NCBI RefSeq assembly: GCF_023055435.1
Contig: NW_025964024.1
Span: 3,410,001 to 3,474,000, forward strand
From: Haliotis rufescens
Taxonomy: Eukaryota
Direction: 5' to 3'
DNA: 64,000 nt
Shown: piece by piece, positions 23,289 through 61,311 of the stretch
Position numbering within the stretch: the stretch's first letter is position 1
How the letters are laid out: every line of letters begins with the position of its first letter
The notes under the pieces: model-generated
What the model was told of the DNA's origin: nothing
What the model saw: the letters and a program-made list of their open reading frames with translations, nothing else
Databases searched by the model: none
Program-made: the position numbers and the translations under genes

Positions 23289-26200
23289 ATGGCGAAACAG
23301 TTGAAACCTGTTCAACCTAAGCCGTTCTCTCGAGTAACAGAATATAGATCTAGTCCTGAACTCATTTTAGAAGTAGAGTCCGTTGCTGGTGACAGTGACA
23401 ATGGAAGACATATGGACAGCATTTCCTCCGAATCTGTTATAGGGGAAGTGTATGAACCAGAAATGTATTATGATGACGCAGAGGAGGCTGGGGAATCGGA
23501 GTCGGAATCCGAGCCCGAACCGAACCCCATGGACACAACCGAATTCACAACTCCTGATCGCCCATTGAAGTTTACCGTCAAACTCCTACTTGACTGGTGT
23601 CAGAAAAACAACGTTAACGTCGATCTAAAAACTATAAAACCTGCCGCTCTTGATCAAATTCTGTGTCGATTTTATGTTGAAGTTCGGAGTAAGGTCGGTC
23701 AACGCTACTCGAGAAATACTATCGTTGCAATAAGATATGGTCTAAATAGGTATTTCGCAAACATGGTACCTCCAAGAAAGATGGACATTATTGAAGAAAA
23801 AACATTCAGGTATTCCAATGCAGTGTTCAAACGTGTTGTTAAAAGTGCCGCCAGAGAAAACCCAGACAGAACAAGCCCCCGAATGACGACTGAAGACCTG
23901 AGGAAAATTTACAATAGTGATGCAATAAGCCCCAATACCCCACTGACCCTTCTGCTCAAAGTGTGGTTTGAAATCAGCGTGTACTTTTCTAGGAAAAGAT
24001 CCAAAGTCCAACGGGAAACCAAAACGTCAGACTTCATCTTTGACGTTGACAGCGACGGACGTCGTTATGTAACCGGGGCACTTAGAGACGAGGAACGTGA
24101 CCGATGTCGGATGTATGAGAAGAAAGGTGATGAGATGTGCCCCATTTTATCCCTGGAGAGGCTTCTGACGAGAATCGACCCCAACTGTCAGTTTCTATTT
24201 CAGCGTCCACGACTGTCCATTCCCGACAGAAAAAGCGCATGGTATCACCCCGAGCGGATCGGCAGAAACTTCACTTCTCAGATGATGGGGAAGATAACCA
24301 AACTAGCCGAGCTTGATACGAAGTACACAAATGTTTCAATGAAGAAACTAGCACCCTGGTCGTTGGAGGAACTTGTTTTCCAACATAGGTATCAAGTCAG
24401 ATCTGTACAAAACGCACAAGTTCAAGCTGTAGTTTCTTACGACACGTCATCTACAGGTGGACAAAGCTTTGTTCCCGCTGATAGATCCCTACCCCCAGCC
24501 GTACTCCCAGCTGATAGATCCCTACCCCCAGCCGTACTCCCAGGTGACTCAACCAAGTCAGTTGGCTGCAACACAGAGGAAGAGAGGGGAGCATTCCGTC
24601 CATACGTTAGACGGAAATCACAGACGAAATCAGACAGGAAAGGTCAGCATATTATGGGTAAATACCACTCCATATTATATATATCAGGTAATACTATCAC
24701 AGAGAGTGAATGGGTTTGGTTTAATGCTGCCTTGAACAGTATTCCAGTTCTATCACGGCGTGTCAGCTTGGTGTGGGAGGAAAGCCAAAAGAGATGCAGG
24801 TCAAGACGTTTTCCACTTTGGTGAAACCCACAGGTATGGTGTGCTGTGAAACCTAGAATCATAGTCAGGGTGAACCGGGATTCGAAGTAGTTAATTGTCG
24901 TCCCTGCTACAATCCTGGTACCACATTATGCTAGTTGCGACTTATATATTTTACGCTGTGTCCGTGTCAGATTTGTGTATTCACTTACTGGCACAATATC
25001 ACATTTTCAGGAGGCCCCGACCCCTTAGATGTGAGCACAGCTAAAGCCAAGATAAAGCGGGTGTTCCAGCGCCTTGTGTACTCGGACCTTGTCACTGTGG
25101 TTGACTGGCTCAAGAGAATTGATGTTCTCAAAGATACTTCAGGTAAGCCAACACGAACGTCAGGCACTGCCATGTCATTAAATAGAGGAATTTGTAAAAT
25201 GAATTTATCACGTTTATGTGTATTATCAACCCGAAGTGATGCAGGTCTCAGACGTTTGCCACCTCGGTGAAACCCACGAGCACGGGTATGGTGCTGACAA
25301 ACCTAAAAACATAATCGGGGCGAACCGGGATTCGAACCCACAACCATAGGTTTCTGGCCTGCCCAAGGGACGCAACTCTGCACAGCGACACTGGGCCACC
25401 GGTGCCCCCACAATGGGGAAAACAGTGTAAGAAAGTAAACGCTTAATTAAAAGTACGTATTTTGATGTCTTTATTAGTAGGTGGGGTGAAATTGGGTGTG
25501 TTGTGACTTGTTACGTGAAAGGTGGCTGACCTGCGAGAGTGCGAACGGAGGGGCGGTCTTGTGCAATCAAGGTGTAATTTGGGAGGTCATTTCCTCCAAC
25601 AAGGGGGCGGTCGGGTAGCCTAGTGGTTAAAGCGTTCGCTCGTCACGCCGAAGACCCGGGTTCGATTCCCGACATGGGTACAATGTGTGAAGCCCATTTC
25701 TGGTGTCCCCCGCCGTGATATTGCTGGAATATTGCTAAAAGCGGCGTAAAACCATACTCACTCACTCACTCCTCCAACAAGACCATATATGTATGTTTAT
25801 GGAGCATCTGTATATAAAGGCTCCGCCTCTGCTGTAGTTTCGTTTCAACTTTTGAAATTGATAGACAAGACAAAAGTGCAGATAAACCTTATTTACGTGC
25901 GCTTTCGATGTTTCTAATACGATATTTGCATTAACGATGTCACGATCTATCTGTATCTGCAAAGTTGTATATGTTACAGTCAGTGTGTAAAATATAATCA
26001 TCCACTTTGTAAAATGGACCCGTGAAGAACCCATGCTTGCTGTTAAAGTTGCCTATGCTTGTCGTAAGAGGCGACTAACGGGATCGGGTGGTCAGGCTCG
26101 CTGACTTGGTTGATGCATGTCATCATATCCCAACTGCGTGGATCGATGCTCATGATGTCAATCACTGGGTTCATCTGGGTCGTCCTGTTTTTAGGTTACA

Positions 26201-26978
26201 GTACCATGTATGAAGCGGTCATTGATTAGTGTGATCCTTGGGTCACTGAACACCCACTTGACTATGATGAATGCTGGTATAATATTCTTCAATATCATTT
26301 GTCATTGCAGGGATAGTCTTTTGTCGTGAAAACTGTCTTAGGATAATGGAACAGCCACCGAGAGCCCGCAAGTTCACCCCACAACAAGTCCATTCCACCC
26401 AGCCATCGCAGTCGGCCCTCAACCCCTACATCCTGCCATCTCCTCTCTCACTGTCACAGTACTACATGAACAACGCTATCAACACGGCCACTACTGGCGC
26501 ATCTCGACCGGCAGCCATCTTCTTTCCTCAATTCCCTCTCACGTCTCAGAACCAGACTACCATAAGCCTGGCATCACACGAGTCCTCTCTGCCAAGACAT
26601 GCTACACCATTAGTGAATGCCCCTATTACACCCAGACCCACATGCGAGGAACATTTTCAGTATCAAACAGGGTCGTCTGCGAATGCGTTCAAAAGTGCCA
26701 CGAATGACAAGCAGCTCGCCATAGCTCCAAGACGTGCCATCCCGGCAGCCACACCCAGTCACTCTTTTACCCAGGGTGCACAGCCCGCGACAGCGGACGA
26801 CAGCTCTTCTGCCACACCCTACAGTCTTGTAGCCCAAGCAAGAAACTGCGTTCTATTGGGTCGTCAACTGCAGAGCAACGTGGATTCTAGTGACTACACC
26901 ACAGCGGCAACATCGCCTCAGAAGAAACTTAAAATTTCCAATGTCACAGGTGAAAGTAAAGTTTGGAAGATTTTGTAA
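23289..26978 (+). CDS. Gene A: DUF3504 (Crypton tyrosine-recombinase-derived, KCTD1-like) protein, ~717 aa, 3 coding exons
   Basis: Start aaaATGG at 23289. Exons 23289-24642 (alternative in-phase donor 24657), 25011-25142, 26311-26978; both introns phase 1. Motifs LDQILCRFYVEVRSKVGQRYS, TPLTLLLKVWFEI, DSDGRRYV, RMYE..GD..CPI, FLFQRP, WY...IG.N, YTN match the Crypton/KCTD1-type domain. The last exon could instead splice at the 26950 donor. Confidence 0.82.
24474..24549 (+). repeat. Coding 33-nt tandem duplication (PADRSLPPAVL x2) in gene A
   Basis: gctgatagatccctacccccagccgtactccca repeated twice. Confidence 0.9.
25011..25142 (+). other. Symmetric phase-1 exon encoding the shared unknown domain (gene A)
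   Basis: ttttcag|...|gtaagc; encodes GGPDPLDVSTAKAKIKRVFQRLVYSDLVTVVDWLKRIDVLKDTS. Confidence 0.8.
25604..25769 (+). mobile_element. SINE family A
   Basis: Full copy, TSD tcctccaacaag. Confidence 0.9.
26017..26175 (+). mobile_element. SINE-like family B (3'-truncated)
   Basis: Similar to the 813 copy. Confidence 0.75.
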
Positions 26979-27830
26979 AACTTTCATCCGAGTTCAACTT
27001 GGAGAAATGTAGTCCACAGAGAAGACAAGACTGCCATATTCAGACTTTATCCAGAAATATACATCATGGCATACAGTCGGCTTTTGGTCAAACATATTGA
27101 CTTTATACTTGAGGAATCATTGACGTTGTTTCAATGTTTACCTTACTGACTCATTCCAATTGAGATCATGTGCATTTCAAGTATTGAACTGAGAATTCCA
27201 ACTTTCTATGAATGGTGTCCAAATTAAAATCATGTCAAATTAATACAGTTGAATTACAGACGCACGAAGGAAGCACAAAATACTCTAGAATATGATTTAT
27301 ATTAATAGATTGACTCACGAAACTAGTTCTACATAATCTACGTTCCACAAAAGTAGATGTGAGTGAGTTAGTTAAAATTAAACATCGCATCGGCATTGTT
27401 TCAACCATATAGCCACAGTAACTATAGCCGATGGTGACAAATGATATGTCTGTTATGTAGTCTAGTCTTTAGTCCGCCTGTTTTTTAACAGTCTGACTTG
27501 AACGTATCATTAGCATTTTCTTGAACAAAATATATAATAAACTGTCCGAAGGGTTAAGCCATACAGTACGTTTAGAGTATTAGTGTAATCCGATCCCATC
27601 GGAGTGTGTAGATACGTGGTTGGTTTTTCATTTTCACCTGCGGTTGTCTCCCCTTTCGGGTTTGCATGTTTGATTATTGCGGTTGCTCCCGTCGCTTCCT
27701 TCTTGGTAGTACTGCAAAGTTGTTTTATTGCATTTTGAAATAAAATCAATTACTGTATTTGTACTACGTGTCATTAATGCCTTATGGAATTATTATTGTC
27801 ATTGAGCTGTTATACACTTTCGTTATTAGA

Positions 27831-27992
27831 GTGAGTGAGTTTGGTTTTACGCCGCTTTTAGCAATATTCCAGCAATATCACGGCGGGGGACACCAGAAAT
27901 GGGCTTCACACATTGTACCCATGTCGGGAATCGAACCCGGGTCTTCAGCGTGACGAGCGAACGCTTTTACCACTAGGCTACCCGACCGCCCC
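27831..27992 (-). mobile_element. SINE family A
   Basis: Full copy, TSD tcgttattaga. Confidence 0.9.
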
Positions 27993-28029
27993 TCGTTATT
28001 AGAAAAGGCAATTGACTAACACATGGGGA

Positions 28030-28256
28030 TTCTGGGTAAGAATATTGGTCCCCAGCACCCAAGCTGTTCGTAAGTGTATCGGGTGGTCAGGCTCGCTGAC
28101 TTGGTTAATGCATGTCATTGCATCCCAATTGCGTGGATCGATGCTCATGATGTCGGTCACTGGATTGTCTGGTCCAGACTCGATTATTTACAGACCGCCG
28201 TCATATAGCTGGAATATTGCTGAGTGCGGCGTTAAACAACAAACAAACAAACAAAA
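28030..28256 (+). mobile_element. SINE-like family B
   Basis: Similar to the 813 copy. Confidence 0.8.
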
Positions 28257-30164
28257 AACTCTAAGCGTTGATCATTCAGTTTACGTATGTGTGCTATAAA
28301 CGTCTCTATAGTGTGGATCTGCTTATCTCTTGAGTTGTGCACGTATCTTGTCTATGTGACGCCATCCTGTGCATCACCGTGGTCTGTTAGCGTTGTTTAT
28401 TTTACTCAACACAATATAATCACAATGTTGACAATTGTACACAGGCACACCTGTAATGACAGATAGCGTTTGATATACCTTTTACTGACCAAGCCACATG
28501 ACACAACGCTAAACGGTGCTATTGCGCAATCACTATCACACACTAGGGGCGGTTAGTTAACACTGCTGTTATTTTTTCAATATATTTGAAAGACTGTTTG
28601 TAAAAATAACTGATTATATATATTGCTTGTATACTGCTGGCGCCATTAACATGTGGGTGAATGTTATTTGTACTACAGTCAATAGAACCAGGAGCACATG
28701 CTTGGCAGTCTGCAGCTTTGAACTCCGGATGTAAAGGTAAAATGGGATCGATCATTTATTGTTGGAGGGTGCTAATTTAGGAATCTGAATTCATAACCCC
28801 GCAGCTTAACACCGCCCACCCCCAGCCCCAGCCCCACCCCCTCTAGTAGTGCCAGCATCTCCCGTCTAACAATGCAAACCTTTTGTTTCTTTGCTTTAAA
28901 TATATTAACAAAATTATTTCCTAATTTTCTAAGATCCTCCCCTAAATAAATATGGATGTTTCATTACTGGTGATCTTGCGTTCCTCACTCCATCCAAATT
29001 GTCCAGTCCCAAAGATAGCACAGCGTCTGTTGTGCCCTTAAACCTACAGTGGTCACTATATCCTTCACTATCGCATAATGTTTGACATGTTTCCCTTTGT
29101 CTCAAAATAAGACTACCACTTTAACCTCTGGTGATGTAGACGTGATATAGATGACCATTCAGCCCCGTGTGCTGAGTAAAGGACGAGAACTCAACAGATG
29201 TATGTAATATCTAGAACTGGTCAATGTCAAGAAACGAAAACAGTGAACAGCGTGTTACAGTTAGATAATATGTGCACGTAGGCAAGATGTTATAGGCTAA
29301 AGGATGAACGTGGGACAATCTTATCCCAAAATGACATCCAATATATTTTCGTTTTCCGATTCGCCCGCTAATAAACAAAAACAGTTTTTAAATTCTTACT
29401 TTTCTCAAAGGTAAAAATAGTTAGTAAAACCTTAACTTATTATAGGTTATCACGCAATTTGATGAAACGTAAATACATAACGATTTCTTTATCAAATAAT
29501 GTTTTTTTTACGTACTGGATTTCTTTTGTACCTTTCGGATAAATGTGTGAGATACCTTCTGACTGACTTCCTAGACACATAGGACAAAGATGTTGGTTAT
29601 TTGTTACTGATTAATAACTAGCTTCATTTCAAAGTACGCAGTAGAATTGGCGAGAGGTAACCCAGATATGACAAGACCGAGAGCATAAGGAAACGGATAT
29701 TTCACTCTCACGGTCGTTTCCCAAAATAACTGAATTCGGTAGATAACTAGTCGTATCACACTCCTGATAATTCCCTTTGCGGCTGTTGGTTAACTTTAGT
29801 AACAGCTGTATATCAAACCTCTTGTTCTCATATATCGTGGAACATTCCGATAAGGCAGTATTCGACTGATAAATTCTCTGAAGTAGTCGACACGAGACCA
29901 GTTTATCATAACAGGCGCAGGAATATCCAGCGTTCCCTAACTCTTTATTGGATTCAAGCGATGTCCTTTATGTTAAAACAATAGATTCTGGAACTAAAGA
30001 AACAAATTCTTTTTTCTCGGTGAGCAAACTCTTGCGTTATAGAGTTGTCTTTCTTCCCATGTTTACCGACACCAGGTGGCTTCCGGTATCATGGCTGTCA
30101 ATCATTGAATAAGATTGTGTTGATTATGACTTTAGTAGTGATGTTGTGTTTTCATGTTTAAGAA

Positions 30165-33100
30165 ATGGACCCCACCAGCAAGGAAAGTGAAGAATCAACT
30201 AATGATGAGAAGAAGTCAGCGGTCGCGGGTTCAGATGTGCACCATGAGGCAGGAATCGGCGAAGAGAACGTGGAAGACGCTGATATTGATAACGAAGATC
30301 GTGATGATATTTACATGGTACCGGGCTCGAGTTCGGGAAACGGAGGGTCCGAAACCATGCATTCAAGCATGTTACGCATACCAACACCTGAAGAATCTAA
30401 TTTTCTCATGGAAAATAAAAATACAAACAGGAAAACTGGTGCAGATATGAAAATTCTTGTTAGCTACTTAAAATCTTTGAATGAAAAGCGCCCACCAGAA
30501 TGCATCCCACCTATAGAACTTGATAAATACCTGTCCTCCTTCTTCATGGTTGTAAGAAAGTTTGATGGAGCGGAGTATGAGCCCTGCAGCTTAAGGGCAA
30601 TGCTGGCTAGCATTGAGCGGTACCTGAAACTAAAATGTTACCCAACATCTTTGACCAGAGATATTCACTTTGCAAAGACAAGAGCTGCCTTGAAGCTCAA
30701 GCAACAAATGTTGAAACAAATGGGTAAAGGTGTGAAGTCACAGATATCATCAACATCACATGTCATGGAACAGAGATTGTCACAGTTATGCAAATCTCAA
30801 GAATTTGGACCTTACACCCCTGTGTCAGTGCTATTTTCTCTGTGCTTTGTTTTTGTTGTGAATTTAAAAATGAGAAAAGCAACAGAACACAAGAAATTGT
30901 TGTGGGGAGACATAATGTTAGGAGTAGAAGAGGAGTCTGGGAGGGAATATCTTGCATTTTCTCCACAAATGCTGCACAGAACAGCAAACAGTCACTTGCG
31001 TCAAGCCCGGCAGATGATATGGAGCAAGCCGGAGATACCAGAACAGGATCCTGTAGCTTTGTACAAATTATATGCAGAAAAAAGACCTATTGCTGCCAAT
31101 CACAGATACTCTCCATTTTACCTGGGTGTAAATGTGAATCAACCTGCCCCTGCTCAGTCATGGTATCGCCCTTGTGCTCTAGGTATGAACAAGCTTAATG
31201 AGATGGTGAGACAGATTCGTGACCTAACAGGAATGGCTGCCCAAGTTGCCCCGTCAGAGGGTACTGCTGTTGTAACAGGTGATGGAGACTCAAACTGTGA
31301 CTCTACAAATGCCTCATCAGTTGATAATGACGAGGGAGAATTGAACACAAGCCAGAATGACAGCTACAGTCGACAAGACAGTAAGGTGTCTGATGTTCTG
31401 GCATACCATGTGATTGCACAACCAGATTCTGAACTGGACTCTAGTGATAGCCTGTCCCATCAGTCCCTCTCATTTAATGAAGAAATAGTAGATGATGTTG
31501 CTGACCAACAGGACAACTGCCATGGAACTGTGTCAGGATACTCCACTGATGATAACATTGCTAACGGTAAGTTATTTTCTCTTCTTCCATGTACATGTGA
31601 TATAACCACTCATGTTTGTTGTAATATTTTGCATTGTTTTAGATAGTATCAGGCACAAATGCATTAACACTAGTAATGACTTTCAACTTTAGGCTATGTT
31701 ATTATGGTAAGTAGATTAGGATACTGTTTGCATGCAAACCATGCTAACCAATGCTAAGAGGGTTTGCATACTTTCCATATATTTTTCAGAATTATGTAAA
31801 TATTGGGAACACATAAACATGATAATGATGAGCATTTTAAGAAAGTATCTAAACATGTTAGTAGCCTACATTGTTGAACACAGTTCAGACTGTTCCAAGT
31901 TGAATTATTGCCGCATAAACATGGACCATAATCTCAAGTGATCCAGGGGTATCCCATTGGTTCACAGCTCAGAATAGTAGTTTCCGTATTCGACGTAATA
32001 AGCGCCCAGGGCGTACTCAAAATTAGAAATAGTGGGCTCTTATTAGTATATTATTTTGGTGAAAAAAACAGAGTTGAAAGATCATAAATTTCATGGTTTA
32101 TGCTGACAGCCTGAAATGATTAAATTGTATACGACAGATATATTATTCCAGAATTTAATTGCCCATAATTAAGGGTGCATATAACACACGAGTGTGTATT
32201 ATACACAAATAAATAAGTCTTGTGTACATTGATCAATCGGAAGGTGTGCTAATTGGGATTGATAGCCAATATATTAGCAAATATCGCCATGGGCGCTTAT
32301 TAGAGCGGGGCACTTATTACGTCGAATACAGTACATGCAGTATGTACAGAAAAATAAATTTACTTTTGGATAAGACAACCAGTCCGTATAGATTGTTACT
32401 AGTCTCTGACCAATGGACTAGTGGTTGTAATCTGTGTGATTTTATGCAGCTAGCATGACTTGTTACCCGACTTTCCGTACCCATGGAGAATTGTACCAAG
32501 CGAAAATAATTCAAAATGGCTAACCCGTACCTAATATTCTCGTCAGATTTGTACATGTATCATGATGTATTGGAGCATTTGTACTTTATCATGTTTATTT
32601 GGCTGACTCATACCCAAATTTGGAAGACCCTTACCGAATTTTGGATGACTCGTACCCGTTTATCTTTTGAAGCAATGTTTCCAAAACGGGATTGCCTTAA
32701 CCGGTATAGACTATAAAAAAAAATTTTAAAATATGTTTGTAATTGCTTTTTCTGCAGTAAATTCTCATATATTCTCATCTGCAAGTTCATCATGTTCATA
32801 GCAATTTATTCATAGCTCTATTACATTTCCAAAATTCAATCATTTTACATTTCAAATATTCACTGATTTCACATTTCCATTCCAACATTTATTCATTATA
32901 CATTTCAAACATTCATTCATTAGTTGGTGAATGAACGATCAGTCAATCAACTCAATGCAAAGTGACAATGAATGACTTCTAAACAATCATTTTACCTCTT
33001 TAATATACCAGTAACATTAGGATTAAATAGATTTGAGTTAACTCAGTTGGCTGTGGTGGCATGTTGTTGATTTACCGTAGTATGTAAACTATCAAGGTCT

Positions 33101-36100
33101 TGGAAGCCGGACGGTGTAACAAAAAGTTTACACAGCTGCTGATCATGTGATTGGAGTCCTCATGTGTTCTTGTTATGAAACCAAAACAATCAATGTCTTA
33201 GTAGCTGAAAACATGATTAATGTTTCATGTTTCAAACCATATATTTTTTCATTGGGTACAGATTCTCTTTTTTGGGTATGGGTCATCTAGCTCAAATGGT
33301 TCAAAGCTGTATGTTACCTTGGTTTCTCTCTGTTTTAATTGAAAGTAACACAAATCATCAATAAACTTTTATATCATGTATATATCTGTTCTGACACAGA
33401 TGCATTGATTTTAATACCCCCAAACTAAAAGGGCGTGGTTATATAGTAGGGGTGAATAAATACGTCGGTCCACCGGTGCATCATGAGTTTTCATGTGATG
33501 AAACATTTTTGTCAGTCGGATATCGCAGAATGTGTTGTAATTAGCGTTTTAACATGTTTAAGTTCACTACTAAAAATAGCCACAACGAACATGTGTCTAC
33601 AGCAAACTTATACTTTTGAACCTGCTCATTTGATACACATCGTGTCTTGACCTATGTATCATGATACGTATCATATCATGACCTTGCTGTATCGTTACAC
33701 CCCTAGTAAATAGTTATTCCAAGGAATTCTGTCCGTCCTTCCAAGGACATTTTTTGTGCGACCTATAACTTGAAAACTACTAAATAGATTCTTTTCACTT
33801 GGTGAACACTTTTTATACCTATATGAAAGGTGCAATGCAAAGTTTGATTTCAGTGTTTGGATTTTCTGAAAAAATACAGCTTTTTTTCATTTATTTTGCT
33901 TAGAATGTTTTTACTTAAACATTTGTGCAATGTATCACTTGAAAACTACTACATGGATTCTTTTCAAATTTAGGGAACAGTGTCTATACCAATATAAGAG
34001 GTGCAGTGCATAGTTTAATTTTAATATGTGTATTTGCTGAAAAAGTATGATTTTTTTCATGATTTGAACGTAGTATATTATTTTACTTAAACATTTGTGT
34101 GGCCTCTTACTTGAAAACAACTTCATGGATTCTTTCCCAATTTGGGGTACAGTTTCTATACTGAAAGAGAGGGCCAGTGCAAAGTTTGTTTTCAATAAGA
34201 AATCTTTTTGCCTTTTTTATGTTTTGAACTTAGAAATATGTTGGACTTGGAAGTTTCTGCTAGCCATATATGTCTTGCAGTCTGATCTGTGATATGCACA
34301 GTTCGTTTGCCCGACGTGGGTACAATGTGTGAAGCCGTGATATTACTGGAATATTACTAAAANNNNNNNNNNNNNNNNNNNNNNNNNNNNNNNNNNNNNN
34401 NNNNNNNNNNNNNNNNNNNNNNNNNNNNNNNNNNNNNNNNNNNNNNNNNNNNNNNNNNNNNNNNNNNNNNNNNNNNNNNNNNNNNNNNNNAGCACATAAA
34501 TTTGCTTTTTCAGAATTATTTTCCACTTTATATAATAACTATTTTAGTGTCCGTGGAATCTGTATACCAGTTTTGTTTTTCTTGCCTAATAATTCTAATA
34601 ATATACAATTATGTGAGCTGTAGCCGTGTATAGTGCCAGTGCTATCCCATAGATATTCGTCAGTGAGGACATAAAATAAAACATGAAAGATTCTTAGGTT
34701 GTTCGTGTACATTGTTGTAAGTTGTAATGTTCAAGTCTGTTATAAAAATGGTCAAAATAGCGACTTTGTACGGGTCATCTGATTGCTTGCTCTGTTTAAT
34801 ATAATCATGATAATGATGTGATGTTATAATAGGCAGTGTTAGAATTTATATAGGGATCCTTCCCTGGGTTTGTTGTTAGACTATTGAAGAATCTAAGGAC
34901 CATCTGAGACTTTAGTTTAGACATTACGGTAATCATCGTAGGATGGTCATTGTAATGGAAAGGACACCTTGATGTTTATTCTTACTTTTTAACACTGGAT
35001 ATGTTTTCTTTTCTTTCAGAACCTCACCATTCAGAGCACACTGATGATATTGATTTAGCTACAGCTAAACATCAGCTCTCTGGGATTTTGCAAAGGATGG
35101 ATATTTTGGATCTGGTAGCGTTTGACCAGTGGTTGAAGAAAATGAAGATTGGTCGCGACACTGCAACAGGTACTGTTTGGTTTTATGTCATCAATCTAGT
35201 ATATCTTCACAGGTTGCTTGACTCAAAGCAAGTTCATGTGCATATTATTCTCACAACCCTGCATTCTGATTACCGTATTCGAGGTAATAAGCGCCCAGGG
35301 CGCTCTCAAAATTAGAAATCGGGGGCTCTTATTAGAATATTATTTTGGTGAAAAACACAGAGTTGAAAGATAAATTTCGTGGTTTATGTTGACCGCCTGA
35401 AATGTTTATGTACGACAGATATATTTTTCCAGAATTTCATTGCCAATAATAAAGGGTGCATATAATACACGAGTGCGTATTATACGCGAATAGGAGAAGG
35501 AAGGGGTATGTACTATAAGGGAATAGGGTTCGGAAGAGGTGCTAATTGGGATTGTTCACTAGCCAATATATTAGCAAATCTCGCCGTGGGCGCTTATTAG
35601 AGCGGGGCGCTTGTTACGTCGAATACGGTATATGTCAGCGATAGAAATTGGCACTAGTCCTATAGTTCCTGTCAAACTACCCAATAGTTTAGTTATCATA
35701 AGGACAAGTAGAAATTTGCCATTTTTAAGGGTTTTGCTATACGTTATTATAAGGACTAGTGGACGAAATATGTTAGTTTTTATAGCTGTGTGTAATACAC
35801 ATACCTTGTGAAGTTGTCATGGCTAATATCTACCCTCAGTACTATACTGCATGGTATACTGCTATACGCTTTTCAAACAATACATATTGCATTATTTTAC
35901 CTGTGTTCCGGTATATTGGGTAAAAAAATTATTACAACTCCTGTATTATCATGATTATTTGTATTATCATGATTATTTGTATCGTTTAACCTTAATTCTA
36001 AACAGAAATTCATTCACAAATTATGTTTCCCTTTGACATGAACTGACAAAATGGCGGAAACGCGGAAGTGATTTTCCCTCACATTCTTATCTCCCCTGTA

Positions 36101-37022
36101 TCTATGACTACAAAATGGTGGCGTCTGACCATGTTGACTTTTGACATTGTAATATTAATTTTAGAAGGTACAAAATAGGATCTGCGTGTACGATCGGTGT
36201 CAGATCGATCACAGTATATTGCAATACAATTGTTTTGCCAATACACAGCCCTAATCAACAGCTAATCTTGTATTTACAGGTGAGATAGTCTGCCGAGAGG
36301 ATGGACGAGGGATGCAGAGTGTCAGTCAACTGCTGTCCCGCAAGAGAAGTCATGATTCTGATGTCCTTGACCTTAGCCCAGACAAGACTAAGTTAGAAAG
36401 TCTGCAAGAGTCAACCAATATCACCCTCAACATCTCCCTCACCCCACAGGCTCTCCTGGGTGGGGGACCAGTCACAGTCACCGCCCACACTTCCAGGGCG
36501 CCTCCCGTCACAGACATCCCTGACGATGGCCCAGCCCAGAACAAGAATCAAGACAAAATACCACCCACAAAATCCAGCACTCCATCTGGGATAGCCAAGT
36601 CAGTGTATCCTATTCACATCATCCCCAACGCCACATCCGAAAGCAGTACAACGAAATATTCACGTCTTTCACCAGGTGTGACCAAAAGAGAAGGACTATA
36701 TTCTTACAGCAGCATCGCAGCACGGGGAGGATCGAGTTACCTGAGACAGTTGACTTCTGGACACGGGACCGCTGTGTCCAGTAACTCTGGCCGCCCAGCC
36801 ACCTCCACCCACCACTCCACACTCTCGCACAGATCTGAACCTTCCATAGTCAAGACAGTGCTGCAGCAAACCCTTCGCCCCGCATCCAAGGCAGATTTCT
36901 CTCATTACTTGTCTAGATCCATGTATCACCATCCTACCAGCAGTAGCCTCACCAATGGGCATTCAGCTATTATACCAGAACCAGGTTCGGGACCAGTCTT
37001 CCCCAAGCCTGAACCAGTTTGA
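30165..37022 (+). CDS. Gene B: DUF3504 (Crypton-derived, KIAA1958/ZMYM/QRICH1-like) protein, ~764 aa, 3 coding exons
   Basis: Exons 30165-31566, 35020-35169, 36280-37022; both introns phase 1. Motifs NTNRKT..DMKIL..YL, ELDKYLSSFFMVVRKFDGAEYEPCSLRAMLASIERYL, EH..LLWGD, GREYL, DPVALYKLYAEKRP, SPFYL, WY...LGMNKL. An N-gap lies in intron 1, so an extra exon cannot be excluded. Confidence 0.82.
31984..32331. mobile_element. MITE family G copy 1
   Basis: TIR ccgtattcgacgtaataag; three similar ~350-bp copies in the window. Confidence 0.85.
33447..33705. mobile_element. hAT-type MITE
   Basis: Termini taggggtg...cacccta with gatac/gtatc subterminal repeats. Confidence 0.6.
33720..34210 (+). repeat. 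Degenerate ~170-bp tandem array (Helentron/HINE-like internal repeats)
   Basis: Recurrent ttttacttaaacatttgtg..acttgaaaactact..gattcttt..ggtgca.tgca.agttt, preceded by a gtcc microsatellite. Confidence 0.5.
34363..34490. other. Assembly gap (128 N) next to a partial SINE A
   Basis: Run of N. Confidence 1.
35020..35169 (+). other. Symmetric phase-1 exon encoding the shared unknown domain (gene B)
   Basis: ctttcag|...|gtactg; encodes ..DIDLATAKHQLSGILQRMDILDLVAFDQWLKKMKIGRDTAT. Confidence 0.8.
35273..35628. mobile_element. MITE family G copy 2
   Basis: TA|ccgtattcga...tcgaatacgg|TA. Confidence 0.85.
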
Positions 37023-47008: not shown

Positions 47009-47054
<46 letters not shown>

Positions 47055-47721: not shown

Positions 47722-47724
47722 TTA

Positions 47725-47757: not shown

Positions 47758-47760
<3 letters not shown>

Positions 47761-52527: not shown

Positions 52528-52966
52528 TCATCAGTATCAAAAATGTAATTTTATTTTTTTGGTATGTCCACAATGGCCATGAAATAACATGTCCACACAG
52601 TTTCAACTCAAGCGAAAGTATTTTGTTCTTGTTATTCTGTAATCGTAAACTAGGGACCAAACATGCTAAAGGCAAAATTGTGTTCAAAGAATAGTTGAAG
52701 ATATAAAAAAAACTGACGTTATGGAACACATAGTAAAGTTGAATTTTACTCAGGTTGACACCAATACAAGCATTCTGCATCCTTATCACAGAGGGTCAAC
52801 CTTGAACCTTCATCACCAATCTTCCCACATTCACCAATCTGGGAAATCAAACTAGGTCCTACAGCATAGTAAGCAAACACATAAACCACTGGGCTACCCA
52901 ACTGGGATGGATATAATGCATAGGCTAGGCATAAGAGACCACACTAAGGTCAGACTGATCTACACA

Positions 52967-53117
52967 TATACTACTAAAAAGAAGTCAAGGAACACTCGAT
53001 TCTTTCATATTACTATAGTTAATCTGTCATGGAAGTAAGGGCCACCCAGTGCCATGACAGATTGACTCTAGTAATAGGAAAGAATCGGCTGGTCCGTAAC
53101 TTCTTTCGAGTAGTATA
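52967..53117. repeat. ~150-bp palindromic (foldback) element; partial relative ~40708-40813
   Basis: tatactact..aaagaagt..gattcttt..tattacta..aatctgtcatgg / ccatgacagatt..tagtaata..aaagaatc..acttcttt..agtagtata. Confidence 0.75.
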
Positions 53118-55043: not shown

Positions 55044-58000
55044 TCATGATACTGGCTCAGCTTTTACTGTTATAGTCTGAACCCCACTGCCAAATCGCAC
55101 TCTCTTTTTCTTCATAAGTGGGGAGGAATCTAACGAGGCTGGTCTGAACTGCAACGGTGGTTTCGGAATGTTGGTTGTGTTGGGATAGGCAATTCCGTGG
55201 TCTGCTCCTACTGGCACACTAGCACTAGTACAAAGTCTTTTCTTCAGAGGTTCGTCATTAGCCGGCTCAGCACACTCCACCCGCGCCTGTCTCTTCAACG
55301 CTGGACTGGCTGGTTTCAGTGACGACTGCTTATTGTCACCGATAGTTATCAACTTGTTTTCCCCACCGAAGGAAATTGTGTTCTGAATGTTAACCGCACC
55401 ACTCCTTATCTCGGGCATCGAGTCAGCTTTTAGGTTGGGACTTCTCGTACCAGCGTGCGGCAAAGCCTTACTGATTTCGGCTACAGTTGATTCCGTTTTG
55501 TCTGGATTCTTTTTAAGACTGTCACACGCACCCAAGAGGGCAGCAATCTCGGCAACGTCCATGTCATTCTCGGAGTAGAATATTCTGTCCGGCAGTTTTT
55601 CCTGCATGGGCTGCTCCTTCGAGGATTTCTTGTGTAGCAACAGCTGCATATTCTCGCTCAGACCAGACACCAGCAGTGCGTCGGCCGAGGGAATGGTCAC
55701 CTTCAGCGGGGAGATATCACTGGACGAGCAGTGGGTTCCGCCAACTGAGTCAAACTCTACTTGCTTAATGGAAATTCCCTGCATGAACGATAAACCATCT
55801 TGCTTGTCGCTACGTGCTGATTTTTCATTTTTCTTCTGCATGGGTGAGTCCAAACTGGTGGATGAGAATTTACCAGGTCCGTTTTGTTTGAACTTCTCTT
55901 TTATTGAGGTCATTTCTTGATCACTGACTTTGCTCTGAGAGTTGTCTGCCCCTTGACCATTCATCCCTTCCACCGCCACCTCCTCCTGGTCGACAGGGCT
56001 ACACAAGACAATCAGCTCTGAAACAACAGATCAACATCACAAACTGGTATTAATTGTAATTTATATTCTGCCCTAAGACAAAAATACCTTGTTAATCTTC
56101 CTATGCCTACTCATTACAGTAATTCTCATGTAATAAATATTCTTAGTAATTATAATGAGCAAACATTATTTCTAGTTTGTAAATTCTTATATTATGCTCA
56201 CAAAATAATTAATGATAAATTCTGTGCCCTGTAAATGTCATGCTCACATGTCTGTATTTTGGGCCATTGGCCTTTTACTGAATAAACATGTCTGTCTGTC
56301 TGTCTGTCTGTCTGGTATTAAGATATTTCAAACAATTTCATGAGTAAGTACGGATAACAATGTTTAGACAAGTGTTTTAACTTTCACTGTCACAAACATG
56401 TTTGCTTGTTTTAACACCACACTATATATTCTAGCTATATGATGGTGACCTGTAAAAAATGGCCCTGGACCATATATCTAGTGATTGATATTGTGAACAA
56501 CAATCTACACCATCGGGTTCCAACAACATGCAATCAACCAAATCACTAAGTCTGACCACCCAATCTTCTCTTACGACGAGCAACGGTTGCTAGGGACCTA
56601 CATCACAACAGGGCAAACACATATCAGCAGTAATGTGTGGTGTTTGATTTGCTTGTTTGTTGTTTAACGCCGCACTCAGCAATATTCCAGCTATATGACG
56701 GTGGTCTGTAAATAATCGAGTCTGGACCAGACAATCCAGTGATTGACATCGTGAGCATCGATCCGCACAATTGGGATACTATGCCATGCATCAACCAAGC
56801 CAGTGAGCCTGACGACCCTATCCTGTTAGTAGCCTCTTACAACAAGCATAGTGGCCTTTTACGGCAAGCATTGGTTGCTGAAGACCTATTCTACCCCGGA
56901 TCTTCACAGGTCGCACATATTTAAGCTGTAATGTGTGGCGTGTGAGGAGAAAACAAGACAACCAGGGTCTCGTTCCACAAAGCGATCTTAGCGCTAAGAA
57001 GACTGTAACTCCAATACTTTAACATGGGCTTACGACAGTCGTAGCGCTAAGATGACTGTAACTCCAATACTTTAACATGGGCTTACGACAGTCGTAGCGC
57101 TAAGATGACTGTAACTCTAATACTTTAACATGGGCTTACGACAGTCATAGCGCTAAGATGACTGTAACTCCAATACCTTAACATGGGCTTACGACAGTCG
57201 TAGCGCTAAGATGACCGTAACTCCAATACTTTAACATGGGCTTACGACAGTCGTAGCGCTTCCATTGCTTTGTGGAATGGGACCCAGGTTATAACGGGTA
57301 ACACTTCTGCAAAACACATGAACATGGGTATGGTGCTGACAGACAAAAAAAAATCACAGCAAATATTGGATGGGAACCTTGCAGGGTCTTGCTTCTTCGC
57401 ACAGACAACACCTCAGACCATGGTGGTCATCCATATTTACCAAACTCTCTCTACAATTTTTACGACCAACATTGAAACATGCTTGACATAACTGGTATAC
57501 AATATTTGTATGGATAACACAACATGGATGACATGGAAATCAAGCCTACCTCCTTGGTGGTATTCCACTCGAACAGTTTTCAGCCAGTCAGCAAACTTCT
57601 TGATGTCCTTTACAAGTAGGCCACGAATCAACTCCAAAACCTTCATCTTGGCTGATCTCAAACCTGGAACAATGGTCATCATGCTGGTTAATAACAACTC
57701 CGTGCAAAACCATGGCAACCATTCGCTAACTTTCATAACAGCCTGTAATCATGAAAATACATCATCATAATCTGAATCACCCCTGAAAATTGCGTTGTGA
57801 TGAACGTTGGTTCATGTTATATTTTTAACATGACCGTGTCTGCCACAGGACTACCTGGACCCGTGGTTAGTCATGTGATATATTGTTTAATGACAAAAAC
57901 TTACTATAGCTCAGTGGTTACACTACAAGTTGCTAATATTCGCAATTCTTTTCCAACGATACATTCCTTTTGACTTGTATATGATTGAGTAAAGATAACG

Positions 58001-61000
58001 CTTCAGTCAACTTCTGTGTACGCATGATCTGATCGTTTGATACATGTATCTAAATAGTTTGGGCCAGAACTGAGGTAAAACAATTCCCAATCAGATATTT
58101 TGTTCCCAACACTTGAGACCTGCACTGGGTACCCTGGTAGGGTCGGGTAATAGGGGGTCGGATACCCGGGTAGTAAATTTGGACTCGTCCCAGCCTTAAT
58201 TTGAGGGTTATAACTCTGAACCAGATCTCAATGGTTCAGTTATGCTACAAACTGAACTGTATAAAACTGACAGAAATATAAACATAGTAAACATTTGTGT
58301 CTTGTTGAAGCAGGACTAGCTACAAACTCTGAGTGAGTGATTATGGTTTTACGCTGCTTTTAGTAATATTCCAGCAATATCACGGCAGGGGACACCAGAA
58401 ATGGGCTTCACTCATTGTACCCATGTCGGGAATCGAACCCGGGTCTTTGGCGTGACTATCGAACGCTTTAACCACTAGGCTACCCGACCGCCCCTTACAA
58501 ACTCTGAGGATTAGTTAAATAAGGCTTACACTTCTGGACTAGTCAATCAATCATCAATCAATCTTTATTGTATGAAAGGCCATTGGCCCATATACACATA
58601 CAGATAAACAATATCATTTACAGCTGTACAGCGCATTATATAATTATTGGATAACTAATATGATGCTTGACATGTAATAGAGGTATTGTTATAACAGTGG
58701 TAATAACCACAGTGGCAGCAGTAGTAGTATAAAATACAAAGGAATGGAATGGAAATATGAAGTTTTACGTCGCAAAGGCTTTCAGCCATAGCGCGACGTT
58801 CAATACAAAAGGATCTATCAGTAATATATTCATCATGTCAAGACAATTTGACAAATCTTACAAAACTCATTTCTGAGGCTGATTATATAACAAATCAAAT
58901 AAATATTTGGGTAATACATGCTTTGCAGGTCACTGTCTTTATCTGGTTTTCAAGGCAGGACATGAAACATCAATACCAAAAAGATATCTGCTTACAATAT
59001 CTAATGAGGTCAGGTCCACATGGTCCAGGGGCATAAATTAAAGTGACAAAGATAAATGATGGGACCAAAAAAAAAAGTACAGATATAGGTCAGTAGGTGC
59101 GTAGGTAGTTTTAACAAAATATTAACCAGTGATTCAAAGAAAAATAATTCTCAACCAACATGCCCTATTTTGGGCATGTTGGGATGGAATGAAATAAGAA
59201 ATACACATTTCTTTTGTGGGACCTATTGTCATGTTGATTTATTGAAACACAAGTATTGGAGGTAGGTGTAGCCTTAGAGACAACTGTCGACAAGCAGTGA
59301 CAAAAATTGGCTCTGGTCCTAATACTCCTATAGTCCTTGCCAAATGGTTGAGGTATCATAAGGACTAGTAGAAATAAGATATTTTTAAGGCGTTTGTTAT
59401 CTGTAATCATTGTAATGACTAGTGGACTAAAAATGTTGGTTTCTATTGCTGGTATTTGGTTTAGGTATTTTGACATTGTGTCCTTCCTTCAACAATACCT
59501 TCAGCATACTCACCAACAACGCTCTCGTCCGTTGGATCATCATCTGGGGATTCTGAATCTAGCGACGAACTGTCTCCTAGCGAATTATCATCCGCAAATG
59601 AATCATCTTGTGACAACACATTGGGCACTCGCACTGTCCTCTCAATGTTCAACGCATCTGTGCATATTGTTTCAATAAGAGGAATGTAGGATGGACGAAT
59701 CGAGTGGTTTGTGTAGTTTTCCTTCACTCCAGCTGATATGGATATCCTCTGCATGATTTTACTCAGGGTGGAGTTTCCAAGTGGGGTATTGTCAAACCAC
59801 ACGTAATCAGACTGGGATACACTCCGCTTTGGACGTTGCCAGAACGCTTCAGTCATGGGATGGAGATGTGTCAGGTACCTCAAGAATGATGCTACTGGGC
59901 AACGAGGGTCTCCTGCAAGACAGTCATATCATTTACATACCAACTGTGAAATAACAGTAAGACTTCCGCCCGTATCCCCCTGAAAAATATTTATGACTAC
60001 AAGGATTGAGCGGAAATGTATACAAATATCCCTTGGGGGGGGGGGGGATATACGGGCGGTAGCCATTTACAACAGGTCATCAACCATGTTAATATCAATT
60101 GAAGGTATGATGAGAATGATTTTTAAAATCAATTAAAATCCTTCCCATCATATGTCTTAAGTTTCCTAAGTATGTCTGAAAGAACACAATTGTATATAAC
60201 ACATGTTTAAACAAAGCGTCATAACTTTTGATTTCTGATCTTGTGAAATTATTATATCTGTTTGTCAACTATACAACAAAACAGGATTACAGTTAGGTAA
60301 AAGTTTCACTCAAACCACCCACCTATGTAACCTAGTTATTACTAAGGATGACAATATGTCCTAGGTGTGGGATGTGGGTGGAATTCTTTCTCAATAGTGC
60401 TGTCACACAAGATTCCGTGATTATTTCACAATATCACTCAGCCATTTGAACCTAATTATTATTGTATGTCATATTAGTATGTAGGCTGTGAACTAATCTC
60501 CCATAGGCTTGGTTGCTCCAGTGGGTGATAAGATTGATATCTAACTTCGATGACATCACAATGAGGAAAATGACAGTGACCTACCTGGCCTTTCAAGCAT
60601 CTTCTCCCCAAGCCTTGTTCCTGTGTGATCTACGTCACCGTAGCCACCCATCTCCTTGATGTTGAACTTAGGGTGGTATTTTAACCAAACACTTTTCCTT
60701 CCATCAACTTCTGTCGACACTACAAAATCATTTTTAGTCATGGCCCTCATACAGTCTTTTCCTCTGTTGACAATGTATAAATTCACATCGAAAAACACCT
60801 TATTTTGTAGCGTTTCGGGGTTGTCGGTTTTCATTGCATCACTGAAATATATTTTCCTCAAATCATCCATTTCTATTCGAAGTCTATGACACTTGCGTGG
60901 TCCCATTCGAACTGCCATCTCATAACAAGCGTTGGCATTTTCAAAACTTTTGTCTTTGATAATGTCTATTCCGGTCTCCTTCATGAAGTATTTCTGTAGA

Positions 61001-61311
61001 CCGAGTCTGATATCCTTCAAACTGACAGTCGATCTGACCGGCCCCTCCTCAAGCTTGGTCCTAACCTTACCATAAAAATCTCTGAGAAACTCCGACAGTT
61101 GGTGAGGGGGCATGTGTGTAACACTGTGAATGGTGTGTCCTTTCGTCATAGCGTATAACACTAACTGGTGTGTCGCCGAACCTATTAGGCTTTCCGTTTC
61201 ACCATCAAAACTAGTCTCGGAAAAGTCCTCGGATGAACGACTGCTCAGTGATCCTGAGTGTTGTCTCTTTTCCATTTTGAAGTCGAACTTACTCGTCGTA
61301 GCTTGAGCCAT
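55044..61311 (-). CDS. Gene C: DUF3504 (Crypton-derived, KCTD1-like) protein, ~737 aa, 4 coding exons
   Basis: Minus-strand exons 61311-60585, 59912-59514, 57663-57550, 56017-55044; all introns phase 1 (total 2214 nt). Motifs PETLQNKVFFDV.LY..NRG, G|DPRCPVASFLRYL, AFWQRPK, VWFDNTPLGNSTL, YTNHSIR. Confidence 0.85.
56400..56912 (-). mobile_element. Two adjacent family B copies (diverged ~56400-56600; intact ~56645-56912)
   Basis: Reverse-complement matches to the 813 copy. Confidence 0.8.
56965..57284. mobile_element. MITE with CWG target duplication (PIF/Harbinger-like) carrying an internal 5 x 53-bp array
   Basis: TIR ggtctcgttccacaaagc / gctttgtggaatgggacc, CAG on both sides; units start at 56989, 57042, 57095, 57148, 57201. 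Confidence 0.8.
57550..57663 (-). other. Symmetric phase-1 exon encoding the shared unknown domain (gene C)
   Basis: gttccag|...|gtaggc; encodes GLRSAKMKVLELIRGLLVKDIKKFADWLKTVRVEYHQG. Confidence 0.8.
58334..58494 (-). mobile_element. SINE family A
   Basis: Full copy, TSD tacaaactctgag. Confidence 0.9.
59961..60064. repeat. Short inverted-repeat element in an intron of gene C
   Basis: ccgcccgtatccccc ... ggggatatacgggcgg. Confidence 0.6.

What the first reader, a model, noticed from the sequence alone, without database searches (positions are those of the whole stretch)
23289..61311. Cluster of three domesticated Crypton (tyrosine-recombinase/DUF3504) genes with one shared architecture
Seen: three intact, intron-containing genes of 717-764 aa in ~38 kb (A +, B +, C -). 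Each runs acidic/Ser N-terminus, DUF3504-like domain, low-complexity linker, shared ~45-aa module, low-complexity tail. I found no frameshifts and no transposon ends. Established: DUF3504 derives from Crypton DNA transposons and was domesticated in KCTD1, KIAA1958, ZMYM2/3/4, QRICH1 and Drosophila WOC, most of which pair it with BTB, MYM zinc-finger or Q-rich regions. None of those partner domains is seen here. Inference: a separate, probably lineage-specific family of recombinase-derived nuclear regulators kept as a cluster, possibly acting together as a complex.
Basis: partly seen in the sequence, partly recalled or inferred. Interest (0 to 1): 0.9.

Follow-up and report, generated by a model that had tools for sequence, protein, structure and literature searches.

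The report
Three dead-recombinase genes sharing one module
Red abalone carries three neighbouring single-copy genes built from inactivated Crypton transposon recombinases. All three are joined to the same small non-transposon module, and the family is conserved across snails and bivalves, so it looks like an undescribed group of transposon-derived nuclear regulators.

Summary
The window is Haliotis rufescens. Genes A (722 aa), B (764 aa) and C (737 aa, my model) are intact, GT-AG spliced and single-copy in the 1.33-Gb genome. Each has an acidic N-terminus, a Cre/QRICH1-like recombinase fold with no catalytic tyrosine, a linker, a 38-50-codon module on its own phase 1-1 exon, and a low-complexity tail. 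The N gap lies inside B's first intron.

They are host genes, not transposons. B and C have orthologues in other gastropods and in bivalves. A has orthologues in two other Haliotis species, plus one unnamed 39%-identical relative. The same genome holds a real multi-copy Crypton with all catalytic residues.

New here: B's recombinase domain belongs to a different Crypton sub-lineage from those of A and C. A single clade for A+B+C is rejected (AU p about 3e-87). Yet all three share the module, which occurs nowhere else in the genome and shows no similarity to Crypton proteins. I read this as repeated fusion of Crypton ORFs to one host module, or shuffling of a symmetric exon.

Function is inferred by analogy to QRICH1 and ZMYM. 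Abalone expression, synteny and complex formation could not be tested.

The parts
23289..24657 (+). Gene A exon 1: acidic N-terminus, Cre-like recombinase fold with dead catalytic remnants, and linker
   Evidence: Reproduces P0001 residues 1-457. A profile of intact Crypton recombinases hits it at E 9e-69. Pfam DUF3504 scores only 15-16 bits, below the 29.7 cutoff. The AF2 model's best PDB matches are QRICH1 (9hjt_H, E 5.9e-9) and Cre (E 4e-6).
25011..25142 (+). Gene A module exon (132 nt, phase 1-1)
   Evidence: It is 96% identical among three Haliotis species.
26311..26978 (+). Gene A tail exon: a G-I-V-F-C start, then low complexity with a basic patch near the end
   Evidence: The tail is 51-66% identical among Haliotis species. 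It gives a weak echo of the Crypton C-terminal motif.
30165..31566 (+). Gene B exon 1: acidic N-terminus, QRICH1-N-like helical domain, DUF3504 and linker
   Evidence: Pfam DUF3504 scores 63.7-64.8 bits against a cutoff of 29.7. It reproduces P0004 residues 1-467. AF2 pLDDT is above 90 for residues 90-185. The best PDB matches are QRICH1 and Cre.
34363..34490 (.). Assembly gap (N) inside B intron 1
   Evidence: Its left edge is a copy of the 165-bp interspersed repeat.
35020..35169 (+). Gene B module exon (150 nt, phase 1-1)
   Evidence: AF2 predicts two helices at residues 480-507 with pLDDT 81-87.
36280..37022 (+). Gene B tail exon: a G-E-I-V-C start, a conserved beta-hairpin motif, and a C-terminal K-P-E-P
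60585..61311 (-). Gene C exon 1: Ser/acidic N-terminus and the first two thirds of the recombinase-like fold
   Evidence: The Crypton recombinase profile hits it at E 9e-34. It is 52% identical to the Lymnaea orthologue. The donor is CAG|GTAGGT.
59514..59912 (-). Gene C exon 2: last third of the DUF3504 fold, with H-x-x-R kept but His III and Tyr lost, plus an acidic linker
   Evidence: Pfam DUF3504 scores 31.7 bits, above the cutoff. The alignment is and the junctions.
57550..57663 (-). Gene C module exon (114 nt, phase 1-1)
55044..56017 (-). Gene C tail exon: a G-E-L-I-V-L-C start, motifs conserved among C orthologues, basic patches, and a C-terminal V-K-A-E-P

Best explanation
A, B and C are ancient single-copy host genes of molluscs whose large 5' coding part is an inactivated Crypton tyrosine recombinase (a core-binding-like helical domain plus a DUF3504 catalytic-like domain). 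Each is joined through a disordered linker to one shared non-Crypton module and a low-complexity tail. The module is about 45 residues, sits on its own symmetric phase 1-1 exon, and is followed by a G-x-hydrophobic-hydrophobic-x-C strand at the start of the next exon. In B- and C-types the tail often ends in a hydrophobic-K-x-E-P motif.

Shown here: intact splicing, single copy, loss of the nucleophile tyrosine, the Cre/QRICH1-like fold, orthologues across gastropods and bivalves, and stronger conservation of the fold and the module than of the linker and tail.

Shown with caveats: the recombinase part of B comes from a different Crypton sub-lineage from that of A and C. The common architecture therefore arose by joining at least two different Crypton ORFs to the same module. 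That could have happened by capture of Crypton ORFs as 5' exons of a module-plus-tail gene, or by shuffling of the 1-1 module exon into independently domesticated genes.

Inferred by analogy only: the dead recombinase fold works as a DNA- or transcription-factor-binding scaffold in the nucleus, as QRICH1 does in the Zincore co-regulator and as the ZMYM proteins do. In the B model the module forms a small helix-helix-strand-strand unit, which I take to recruit a common partner. The C-terminal hydrophobic-K-x-E matches the SUMO acceptor consensus.

My confidence is about 0.85 that these are domesticated host genes, about 0.55 for a chimeric origin with at least two captures, and about 0.35 for the specific co-regulator mechanism. 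The overall figure given (0.6) is for the statement as a whole.
For: Identity and splicing.

Copy number: each gene's best other locus in the 1.33-Gb genome is at most 39% (B), 30% (A) or 34% (C) identical.

Contrast with a real transposon: the same genome holds a 2.42-kb element whose copies on three contigs are 97.7-99.3% identical. Its intronless 522-aa ORF keeps R, K, H-x-x-R, H and Y.

Catalytic residues: B lacks the whole H-x-x-R...H...Y segment. A has V and K in place of the H and R of H-x-x-R, and no aligned Tyr. C keeps H-x-x-R but has lost His III and Tyr, and its orthologues vary at those sites.

Fold: both AF2 models match QRICH1 in Zincore (9hjt_H) first and Cre second.

Orthologues: B-type in Patella, Lottia, Elysia, Mytilus spp., Saccostrea, Crassostrea and Pinctada at 46-63% identity, with a tree that splits gastropods from bivalves. 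C-type in Lymnaea, Lottia, Batillaria, Plakobranchus, Saccostrea and Sinanodonta. A-type in H. rubra and H. asinina, plus an unnamed 39%-identical relative with the same dead motifs.

Constraint: among Haliotis A orthologues the fold is 91-93% identical and the module 96%, against 51-75% for linker and tail.

Module: a three-sequence profile finds only these three loci in the genome. Cross-type profile hits fall at the matching positions. Between A and B the module (38% identity, E 8e-9) is more similar than the recombinase domains (21%). Comparison with a profile of intact Crypton proteins gives hhalign probability 0.2%. All three module exons are multiples of 3 in phase 1-1.

Two lineages: see the trees. 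Holding A+B+C as one clade costs 146 lnL units, AU p 3e-87.

Expression in relatives (indirect): full-length B- and C-type ORFs of 761-817 aa lie on Logan contigs of only 2.5-3.5 kb, which implies spliced transcripts.

Analogy: the DUF3504 region of ZMYM3 mediates protein binding (PMC5358723). QRICH1-SEPHS1 is a zinc-finger co-regulator (Bianchi et al. 2025, cited in PMC13538652).
Against: No dN/dS or synteny could be computed, because orthologue DNA was out of reach. The trees are quick searches, and the clade tested was named after the first tree had been seen. Cross-type module similarity is modest: E 1e-6 to 1e-3 in a small local database, and only 19% identity between B and C in the three-sequence alignment. 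A+C monophyly is neither shown nor rejected (p 0.07). Overall model confidence is low (pTM 0.28 and 0.35), and the module is confident only in B (pLDDT 76-87) and not in A (45-52). Nothing here tests nuclear location, DNA binding or SUMOylation. A's tail gives a weak hit to the Crypton C-terminal motif (E 0.004 in H. asinina, about 1 in H. rufescens). If real, that favours insertion of the module into a Crypton-derived gene over capture upstream of a module gene.
Confidence: 0.6

Rival explanations
1. There was one ancient domestication. A single Crypton-derived gene acquired the module and its introns once and then duplicated into the B-type and the A/C-type before molluscs diversified. The placement of intact Cryptons between them is a tree artefact.
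For: All three share the module, the phase 1-1 exon and the G-x-hydrophobic-hydrophobic-x-C start of the next exon. They lie side by side in abalone. Tandem duplication is the simplest origin for a cluster. A+C monophyly is not rejected.
Against: Holding A+B+C together costs 146 lnL units (AU p 3e-87). Long-branch attraction would pull the three long stems together, not apart. B is 38% identical to this genome's intact Crypton but only 21% identical to A, and it has no BLASTP hit to C. A defective recombinase cannot plausibly give rise to the intact ones nested between the three types (the argument of Kojima and Jurka 2011, PMC3212892).
Confidence: 0.2
2. The module is itself of Crypton origin. 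An ancestral Crypton protein carried it between the recombinase domain and the C-terminal motif. It was lost in the intact lineages sampled and kept only in the domesticated genes.
For: Intact Crypton proteins have long disordered tails ending in a conserved F-x-N-C...N-x-N motif. A's tail gives a weak hit to that motif, and B-types carry a similar I-T-L-N-I strand. So parts of the tails may derive from Crypton.
Against: The module profile against a profile of 15 intact Crypton proteins gives hhalign probability 0.2%. None of the 58 fetched proteins with an intact catalytic motif carries the module. The module profile finds nothing else in a genome with at least 95 DUF3504 loci. This reading also needs several independent losses.
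Confidence: 0.1
3. These are decaying or intron-bearing Crypton transposon copies, or gene-prediction artefacts, rather than functional host genes.
For: The genome is rich in DUF3504 loci: at least 95 match B and at least 89 match A, many with stops. Earlier notes of this scan report intron-containing Cryptons elsewhere in this genome. No abalone RNA evidence was obtained.
Against: All three are single-copy with open frames across 3-4 exons. Orthologues at 38-63% identity occur in distant molluscs, and the B tree follows the gastropod-bivalve split. The module is 96% conserved among Haliotis species. The catalytic tyrosine is lost, yet the fold is conserved.
Confidence: 0.04

Closest known systems
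QRICH1 (the DUF3504 protein of the Zincore co-regulator, PDB 9hjt)
   Same: Both have a catalytically dead Crypton-derived two-domain recombinase fold. QRICH1 is the best structural match for both the A and the B models. The N-terminal helical domain gives sub-threshold Pfam QRICH1 hits. UniRef names B orthologues 'ZMYM2-like/QRICH1 C-terminal domain-containing'.
   Different: There is no CARD and no Q-rich region. Here the fold sits in the N-terminal half instead of at the C-terminus. It is followed by a module and tail that I detected only in these mollusc proteins. Orthology was not shown, and no named vertebrate protein appeared among the B hits.
ZMYM2/3/4 and Drosophila WOC
   Same: These are domesticated DUF3504 nuclear regulators. 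The ZMYM3 DUF3504 region binds protein partners (PMC5358723).
   Different: No MYM-type zinc fingers are present, the domain order differs, and the proteins are much shorter.
KIAA1958 isoforms a/b and KCTD1 isoform b (Kojima and Jurka 2011, PMC3212892)
   Same: They are a precedent for one host gene acquiring Crypton recombinase ORFs as alternative 5' exons. KIAA1958 carries two different DUF3504 domains that are only 26% identical, which mirrors B versus A/C here. One C-type orthologue is even auto-named 'kctd1'.
   Different: Those are vertebrate events within a single gene, and KCTD1b has a BTB domain. Here there are three separate genes, no BTB domain, and a distinct shared module. The events predate the gastropod-bivalve split.
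CryptonA transposons
   Same: The recombinase fold is homologous. A profile of intact Crypton recombinases hits A, B and C at E 9e-69 to 1e-29.
   Different: Real Cryptons in this genome are multi-copy, nearly identical, intronless and catalytically complete. A, B and C are none of these.

Membership tests
Pfam DUF3504 (PF12012) | Score at or above the gathering cutoff of 29.7 bits | tested here: met
   B scores 63.7-64.8 bits. C exon 2 alone scores 31.7 bits. A scores only 15.2-16.3 bits and so fails the Pfam cutoff. A does match a profile of intact Crypton recombinases at E 9e-69 and has the fold.
Active tyrosine recombinase | Complete catalytic set: R...K...H-x-x-R...H/W...Y | tested here: not met
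   In the alignment, B lacks the segment carrying H-x-x-R, H and Y. A has V and K at the H and R positions and no aligned Tyr. C keeps H-x-x-R but has lost His III and Tyr, and the C orthologues differ at these sites.
Crypton transposon (mobile copy) | Several near-identical dispersed copies with an intronless recombinase ORF | tested here: not met
   Each gene is single-copy, with its best other locus at most 39% identical, and each contains introns. The genome's real Crypton (L001-L003) has copies 97.7-99.3% identical and no DNA match in the window.
Domesticated transposon-derived host gene | Single-copy orthologues in distant species, conserved more strongly in the functional parts than elsewhere | tested here: met
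   B and C orthologues occur in gastropods and bivalves. The B tree splits gastropods from bivalves. In A, the fold and module are 91-96% identical among Haliotis against 51-75% elsewhere. dN/dS was not computable.
Domesticated transposon-derived host gene | Transcribed and correctly spliced | tested here: inconclusive
The only evidence is indirect: orthologue ORFs of 761-817 aa on Logan contigs of 2.5-3.5 kb, and RefSeq models for A and B.
ZMYM2/3/4 / WOC | MYM-type (zf-FCS) zinc fingers upstream of DUF3504 | tested here: not met
   There is no zinc-finger hit in A, B or the C exons at E up to 1.
QRICH1 | CARD, Q-rich region, QRICH1 domain and C-terminal DUF3504, with orthology to vertebrate QRICH1 | tested here: inconclusive
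   The QRICH1 domain scores 14.7-23.8 bits, below the 30.8 cutoff, and no CARD is found. QRICH1 is the best structural match. Orthology was not tested because no vertebrate sequences were in hand.
KCTD1 isoform b | BTB/POZ domain downstream of DUF3504 | tested here: not met
   There is no BTB hit.
KIAA1958 | Orthology to vertebrate KIAA1958 (it has no defining partner domain) | not tested
   No KIAA1958 sequence was available by reference. No named vertebrate protein appeared among the 34 B hits.

The most novel reading that the evidence does not exclude
A mollusc host unit (a symmetric 1-1 module exon plus a tail ending in a SUMO-like site) has been joined at least twice to recombinase ORFs of different Crypton sub-lineages. 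That would make this a locus of recurrent transposon domestication. The module would be a new small protein-interaction domain that plugs interchangeable dead recombinase folds into one shared nuclear pathway.
Probability: 0.35. Interest if true: 0.75.

Novelty: new variant of a known kind. Interest (0 to 1): 0.55.

Why it matters
The known Crypton domestications (ZMYM, QRICH1, KCTD1b, KIAA1958) are mostly vertebrate or bilaterian-wide, and each pairs the dead recombinase with a different partner domain. This is a mollusc-wide family with a new partner module, and my literature searches found no description of it. It offers a natural experiment: two distinct Crypton recombinase lineages attached to the same module. 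This makes testable what a host gains from a dead recombinase fold, and whether symmetric-exon shuffling or 5' ORF capture drives such fusions. The recent finding that QRICH1 clamps zinc-finger factors on DNA supplies a concrete function to test.

Tried and rejected
C's relatives were found instead with the search of protein representatives.
- One reference was in the wrong frame and was corrected.
- Module as a displaced catalytic segment: I considered whether the module is a displaced remnant of the recombinase segment running from Arg II to His/Trp III. I rejected this because A and C keep that segment upstream as well as the module, and because the profile comparison gave a probability of 0.2%.
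- ESM Atlas look-up of B residues 468-600: no usable hit.
- PDB sequence search with the B profile: no hit.
- Complex prediction on the module regions of B (470-595) and A (452-525): unreachable four times, then 'no answer' with score 0.01. This is not evidence for or against binding.
- Crypton C-terminal motif in the tails: a profile search gave only a weak hit in A and nothing significant in B or C.
- Joined C protein: it was assembled only inside scripts, from window coordinates, for the frame check, local alignments, profile searches and trees. It was not sent to any database search or folding tool. There, C was handled exon by exon, by reference.


Full report
**What is there.** The window is Haliotis rufescens, contig C246:3,410,001-3,474,000 of a 1.33-Gb assembly. 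Long open frames at 23223-24824, 30165-31646 and 60556-61311 are the first coding exons of three genes.

Gene A is RefSeq LOC124116630 isoform X1 (722 aa). Its protein is reproduced exactly by exons 23289-24657, 25011-25142 and 26311-26978. Gene B is LOC124116631 (764 aa), reproduced exactly by exons 30165-31566, 35020-35169 and 36280-37022.

For gene C no annotated protein was retrieved, so I built a model. It has four GT-AG exons on the minus strand (61311-60585, 59912-59514, 57663-57550, 56017-55044) and gives 737 aa with a single terminal stop. Its junctions are supported because the model aligns in one unbroken BLASTP segment with the orthologues of Lymnaea (48% over 598 aa), Lottia (41%) and Saccostrea (46%). 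The joined C protein existed only inside scripts. In the database and folding tools, C was searched exon by exon, by reference.

**The assembly gap.** The N run 34363-34490 lies in B's first intron (31567-35019), about 530 bases before the exon-2 acceptor. Every residue of the 764-aa model maps to exons on one side of the gap or the other. The sequence just left of the gap is a copy of a 165-bp interspersed repeat that also sits in introns of A and C, which probably explains the gap. The reading frame is carried by the splice (phase 1), not across the gap. A small unseen exon cannot be excluded without RNA. In the alignment of B orthologues the stretch between the fold and the module is poorly conserved, so it neither shows nor rules out a missing piece.

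**Shared architecture.** Each protein starts with an acidic/Ser-rich stretch. This is followed by a two-part recombinase-like fold.
- Pfam gives B a clear DUF3504 hit (64 bits; cutoff 29.7).
- C's second exon passes the cutoff on its own (31.7 bits).
- A fails it (15-16 bits).
- A profile of 15 catalytically intact Crypton recombinases hits A at E 9e-69, B at 1e-51 and the two C exons at 9e-34 and 1e-29. It hits nothing else in the window.

AlphaFold models of B and A both match QRICH1 from the Zincore structure (9hjt_H) first and Cre recombinase second. No MYM, BTB or CARD domain is present.

After a low-complexity linker comes the module. It lies on its own exon of 132, 150 or 114 nt, in phase 1-1 in all three genes. 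The next exon begins with Gly, then two or three hydrophobic residues and a Cys. In the B model the module forms two helices (residues 480-507, pLDDT 81-87) and a short beta-hairpin that spans the exon junction. The A model is not confident in this region.

**Is the module real?** A profile built only from B-type modules finds A's module at E 1.3e-6 and the C-type modules at E 1.7e-4 to 1e-3. The database was all fetched proteins plus every open frame of the window. The hits fall at the matching position, and no unrelated sequence ranks above them. The C-only profile finds A at about 2e-3 and B-types more weakly. Between A and B the module is 38% identical (E 8e-9), whereas their recombinase folds are only 21% identical. 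A three-sequence profile searched against the whole genome returns just these three loci.

**Host genes, not transposons.** Each gene is single-copy: the next-best loci are at most 39% (B), 30% (A) or 34% (C) identical. The same genome holds at least 95 other DUF3504 loci. Among them is a genuine young Crypton, a 2.42-kb element whose copies on three contigs are 97.7-99.3% identical. Its intronless 522-aa ORF keeps Arg I, Lys, H-x-x-R, His III and Tyr.

Against that yardstick:
- B has lost the whole C-terminal catalytic segment.
- A carries V and K in place of the H and R of H-x-x-R, and has no aligned tyrosine.
- C keeps H-x-x-R but has lost His III and the tyrosine, and its orthologues vary at these sites.

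This matches Kojima and Jurka's description of DUF3504 as a recombinase lacking most of the R-H-R-Y tetrad (PMC3212892).

**Age and constraint.**
- B-type orthologues, each with the module, occur in Patella, Lottia, Elysia, Mytilus species, Saccostrea, Crassostrea virginica and Pinctada, at 46-63% identity in the fold.
- C-type orthologues occur in Lymnaea, Lottia, Batillaria, Plakobranchus (auto-named 'kctd1'), Saccostrea and Sinanodonta. In these the module is very strongly conserved.
- A-type proteins were found in H. rubra and H. asinina, plus one unnamed 438-aa relative at 39% identity that shares A's dead motifs.

The B and C lineages therefore predate the gastropod-bivalve split. Among the three Haliotis A proteins the fold is 91-93% identical and the module 96%, against 70-75% for the linker and 51-66% for the tail. 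Several orthologue ORFs of 761-817 aa sit on Logan contigs of only 2.5-3.5 kb. That implies spliced transcripts in those species, which is indirect evidence only.

**Two recombinase lineages.** Two trees place the B clade (support 100) with one group of intact Crypton recombinases, which includes the abalone's own element. They place A and C separately inside another group of intact recombinases, one of them from Pecten. Forcing A+B+C into one clade costs 146 log-likelihood units (AU p 3e-87). A+C together is not rejected (p 0.07). There are two caveats: these were quick searches, and the group was named after the first tree was seen. On the other hand, long-branch attraction would join the three long stems rather than separate them. 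Raw identities agree with the trees: B is 38% identical to the Crypton, 21% to A, and has no BLASTP hit to C.

A dead recombinase is unlikely to regenerate live ones, so the fold was most likely acquired at least twice. The module shows no similarity to intact Crypton proteins (hhalign probability 0.2%), and none of the 58 fetched intact-motif proteins carries it. The simplest reading is fusion of different Crypton ORFs to one host module. This could be 5' ORF capture, for which KIAA1958 and KCTD1b are precedents, or shuffling of a symmetric 1-1 exon.

One weak clue points to insertion of the module into a Crypton-derived gene. Intact Crypton proteins end in a conserved F-x-N-C...N-x-N motif, and A's tail gives a faint match to it (E 0.004 for H. 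asinina, about 1 for H. rufescens).

**Likely function (inferred).** By analogy with QRICH1, which with SEPHS1 forms a co-regulator bound to zinc-finger factors on DNA (Bianchi et al. 2025, cited in PMC13538652; structural match), and with ZMYM3, whose DUF3504 region binds protein partners (PMC5358723), I expect nuclear scaffold or co-regulator proteins. The tails carry basic patches. In C-types of Haliotis, Lymnaea, Lottia and Saccostrea, and in B-types of Elysia and one unnamed species, the tail ends in a hydrophobic-K-x-E motif, mostly followed by Pro; Haliotis B ends in a near match, P-K-P-E-P. Apart from that near match, this fits the SUMO acceptor consensus (established knowledge; not tested here). 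Whether A, B and C act together is unknown: the single complex prediction gave no answer.

**Cluster conservation.** In Lottia the B and C orthologues are both reported on a contig of 5,155,532 bases, so probably the same scaffold. In Saccostrea they are on contigs of different lengths. I could not fetch the DNA to check either case.

**Verdict.** The family is mollusc-wide rather than narrowly lineage-specific. Its recombinase parts have at least two separate Crypton origins attached to one shared non-Crypton module. My literature searches found no description of this family.

Noticed in passing
window 61328-62948: Seven perfect CRE palindromes (TGACGTCA) lie directly upstream of gene C's start codon. 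There are 8 in the window against 0.76 expected, and 0 of 100 shuffles reach 8. This suggests a cAMP/CREB-type promoter.
   Followed up: partly
window 7807-10395 (+): An 862-codon open frame encodes an Arg/Ser-rich and then Glu/Lys-rich low-complexity protein with short tandem peptide repeats. It has no Pfam hit. It is probably a large exon of an unrelated nuclear protein gene upstream of the cluster.
   Followed up: partly
L001:1278-3700, L002:1269-3689, L003:1341-3726 (G000 contigs C583, C90, C46): A young Crypton-like element of about 2.42 kb has copies 97.7-99.3% identical on different contigs. It carries an intronless 522-aa ORF with the full catalytic set, and a roughly 150-bp inverted repeat near one end. 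It looks recently mobile.
   Followed up: partly
G000:C323:3195041-3516550: At least ten DUF3504-like open frames of 515-925 aa lie within about 320 kb on another contig. This may be a second tandem cluster of recombinase-derived genes.
   Followed up: no
window 25604-25770, 27829-27993, 58330-58495, 2655-2821, 11578-11748, 34301-34362; also 26028-26178, 28078-28255, 56640-56915: Two short interspersed repeat families (about 165 bp and about 260 bp, 82-99% identical) populate the introns and flanks of A, B and C. The N gap begins inside a copy of the 165-bp repeat.
   Followed up: partly
proteins P0033, P0034, P0052-P0124 (fetched intact Crypton recombinases): Catalytically intact Crypton proteins share two features after the catalytic Tyr. 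One is a helix with the pattern S-x-x-x-K-x-x-M-S-x-x-L. The other is a motif at the extreme C-terminus, F-x-N-C-x-hydrophobic-x-G-N-x-T-x-N, that follows a long disordered tail. I do not know its function.
   Followed up: partly
protein P0042 (Plakobranchus ocellatus GFO05639.1): This C-type orthologue is annotated 'BTB/POZ domain-containing protein kctd1', apparently because of DUF3504 similarity alone. The name is likely a mis-annotation.
   Followed up: no
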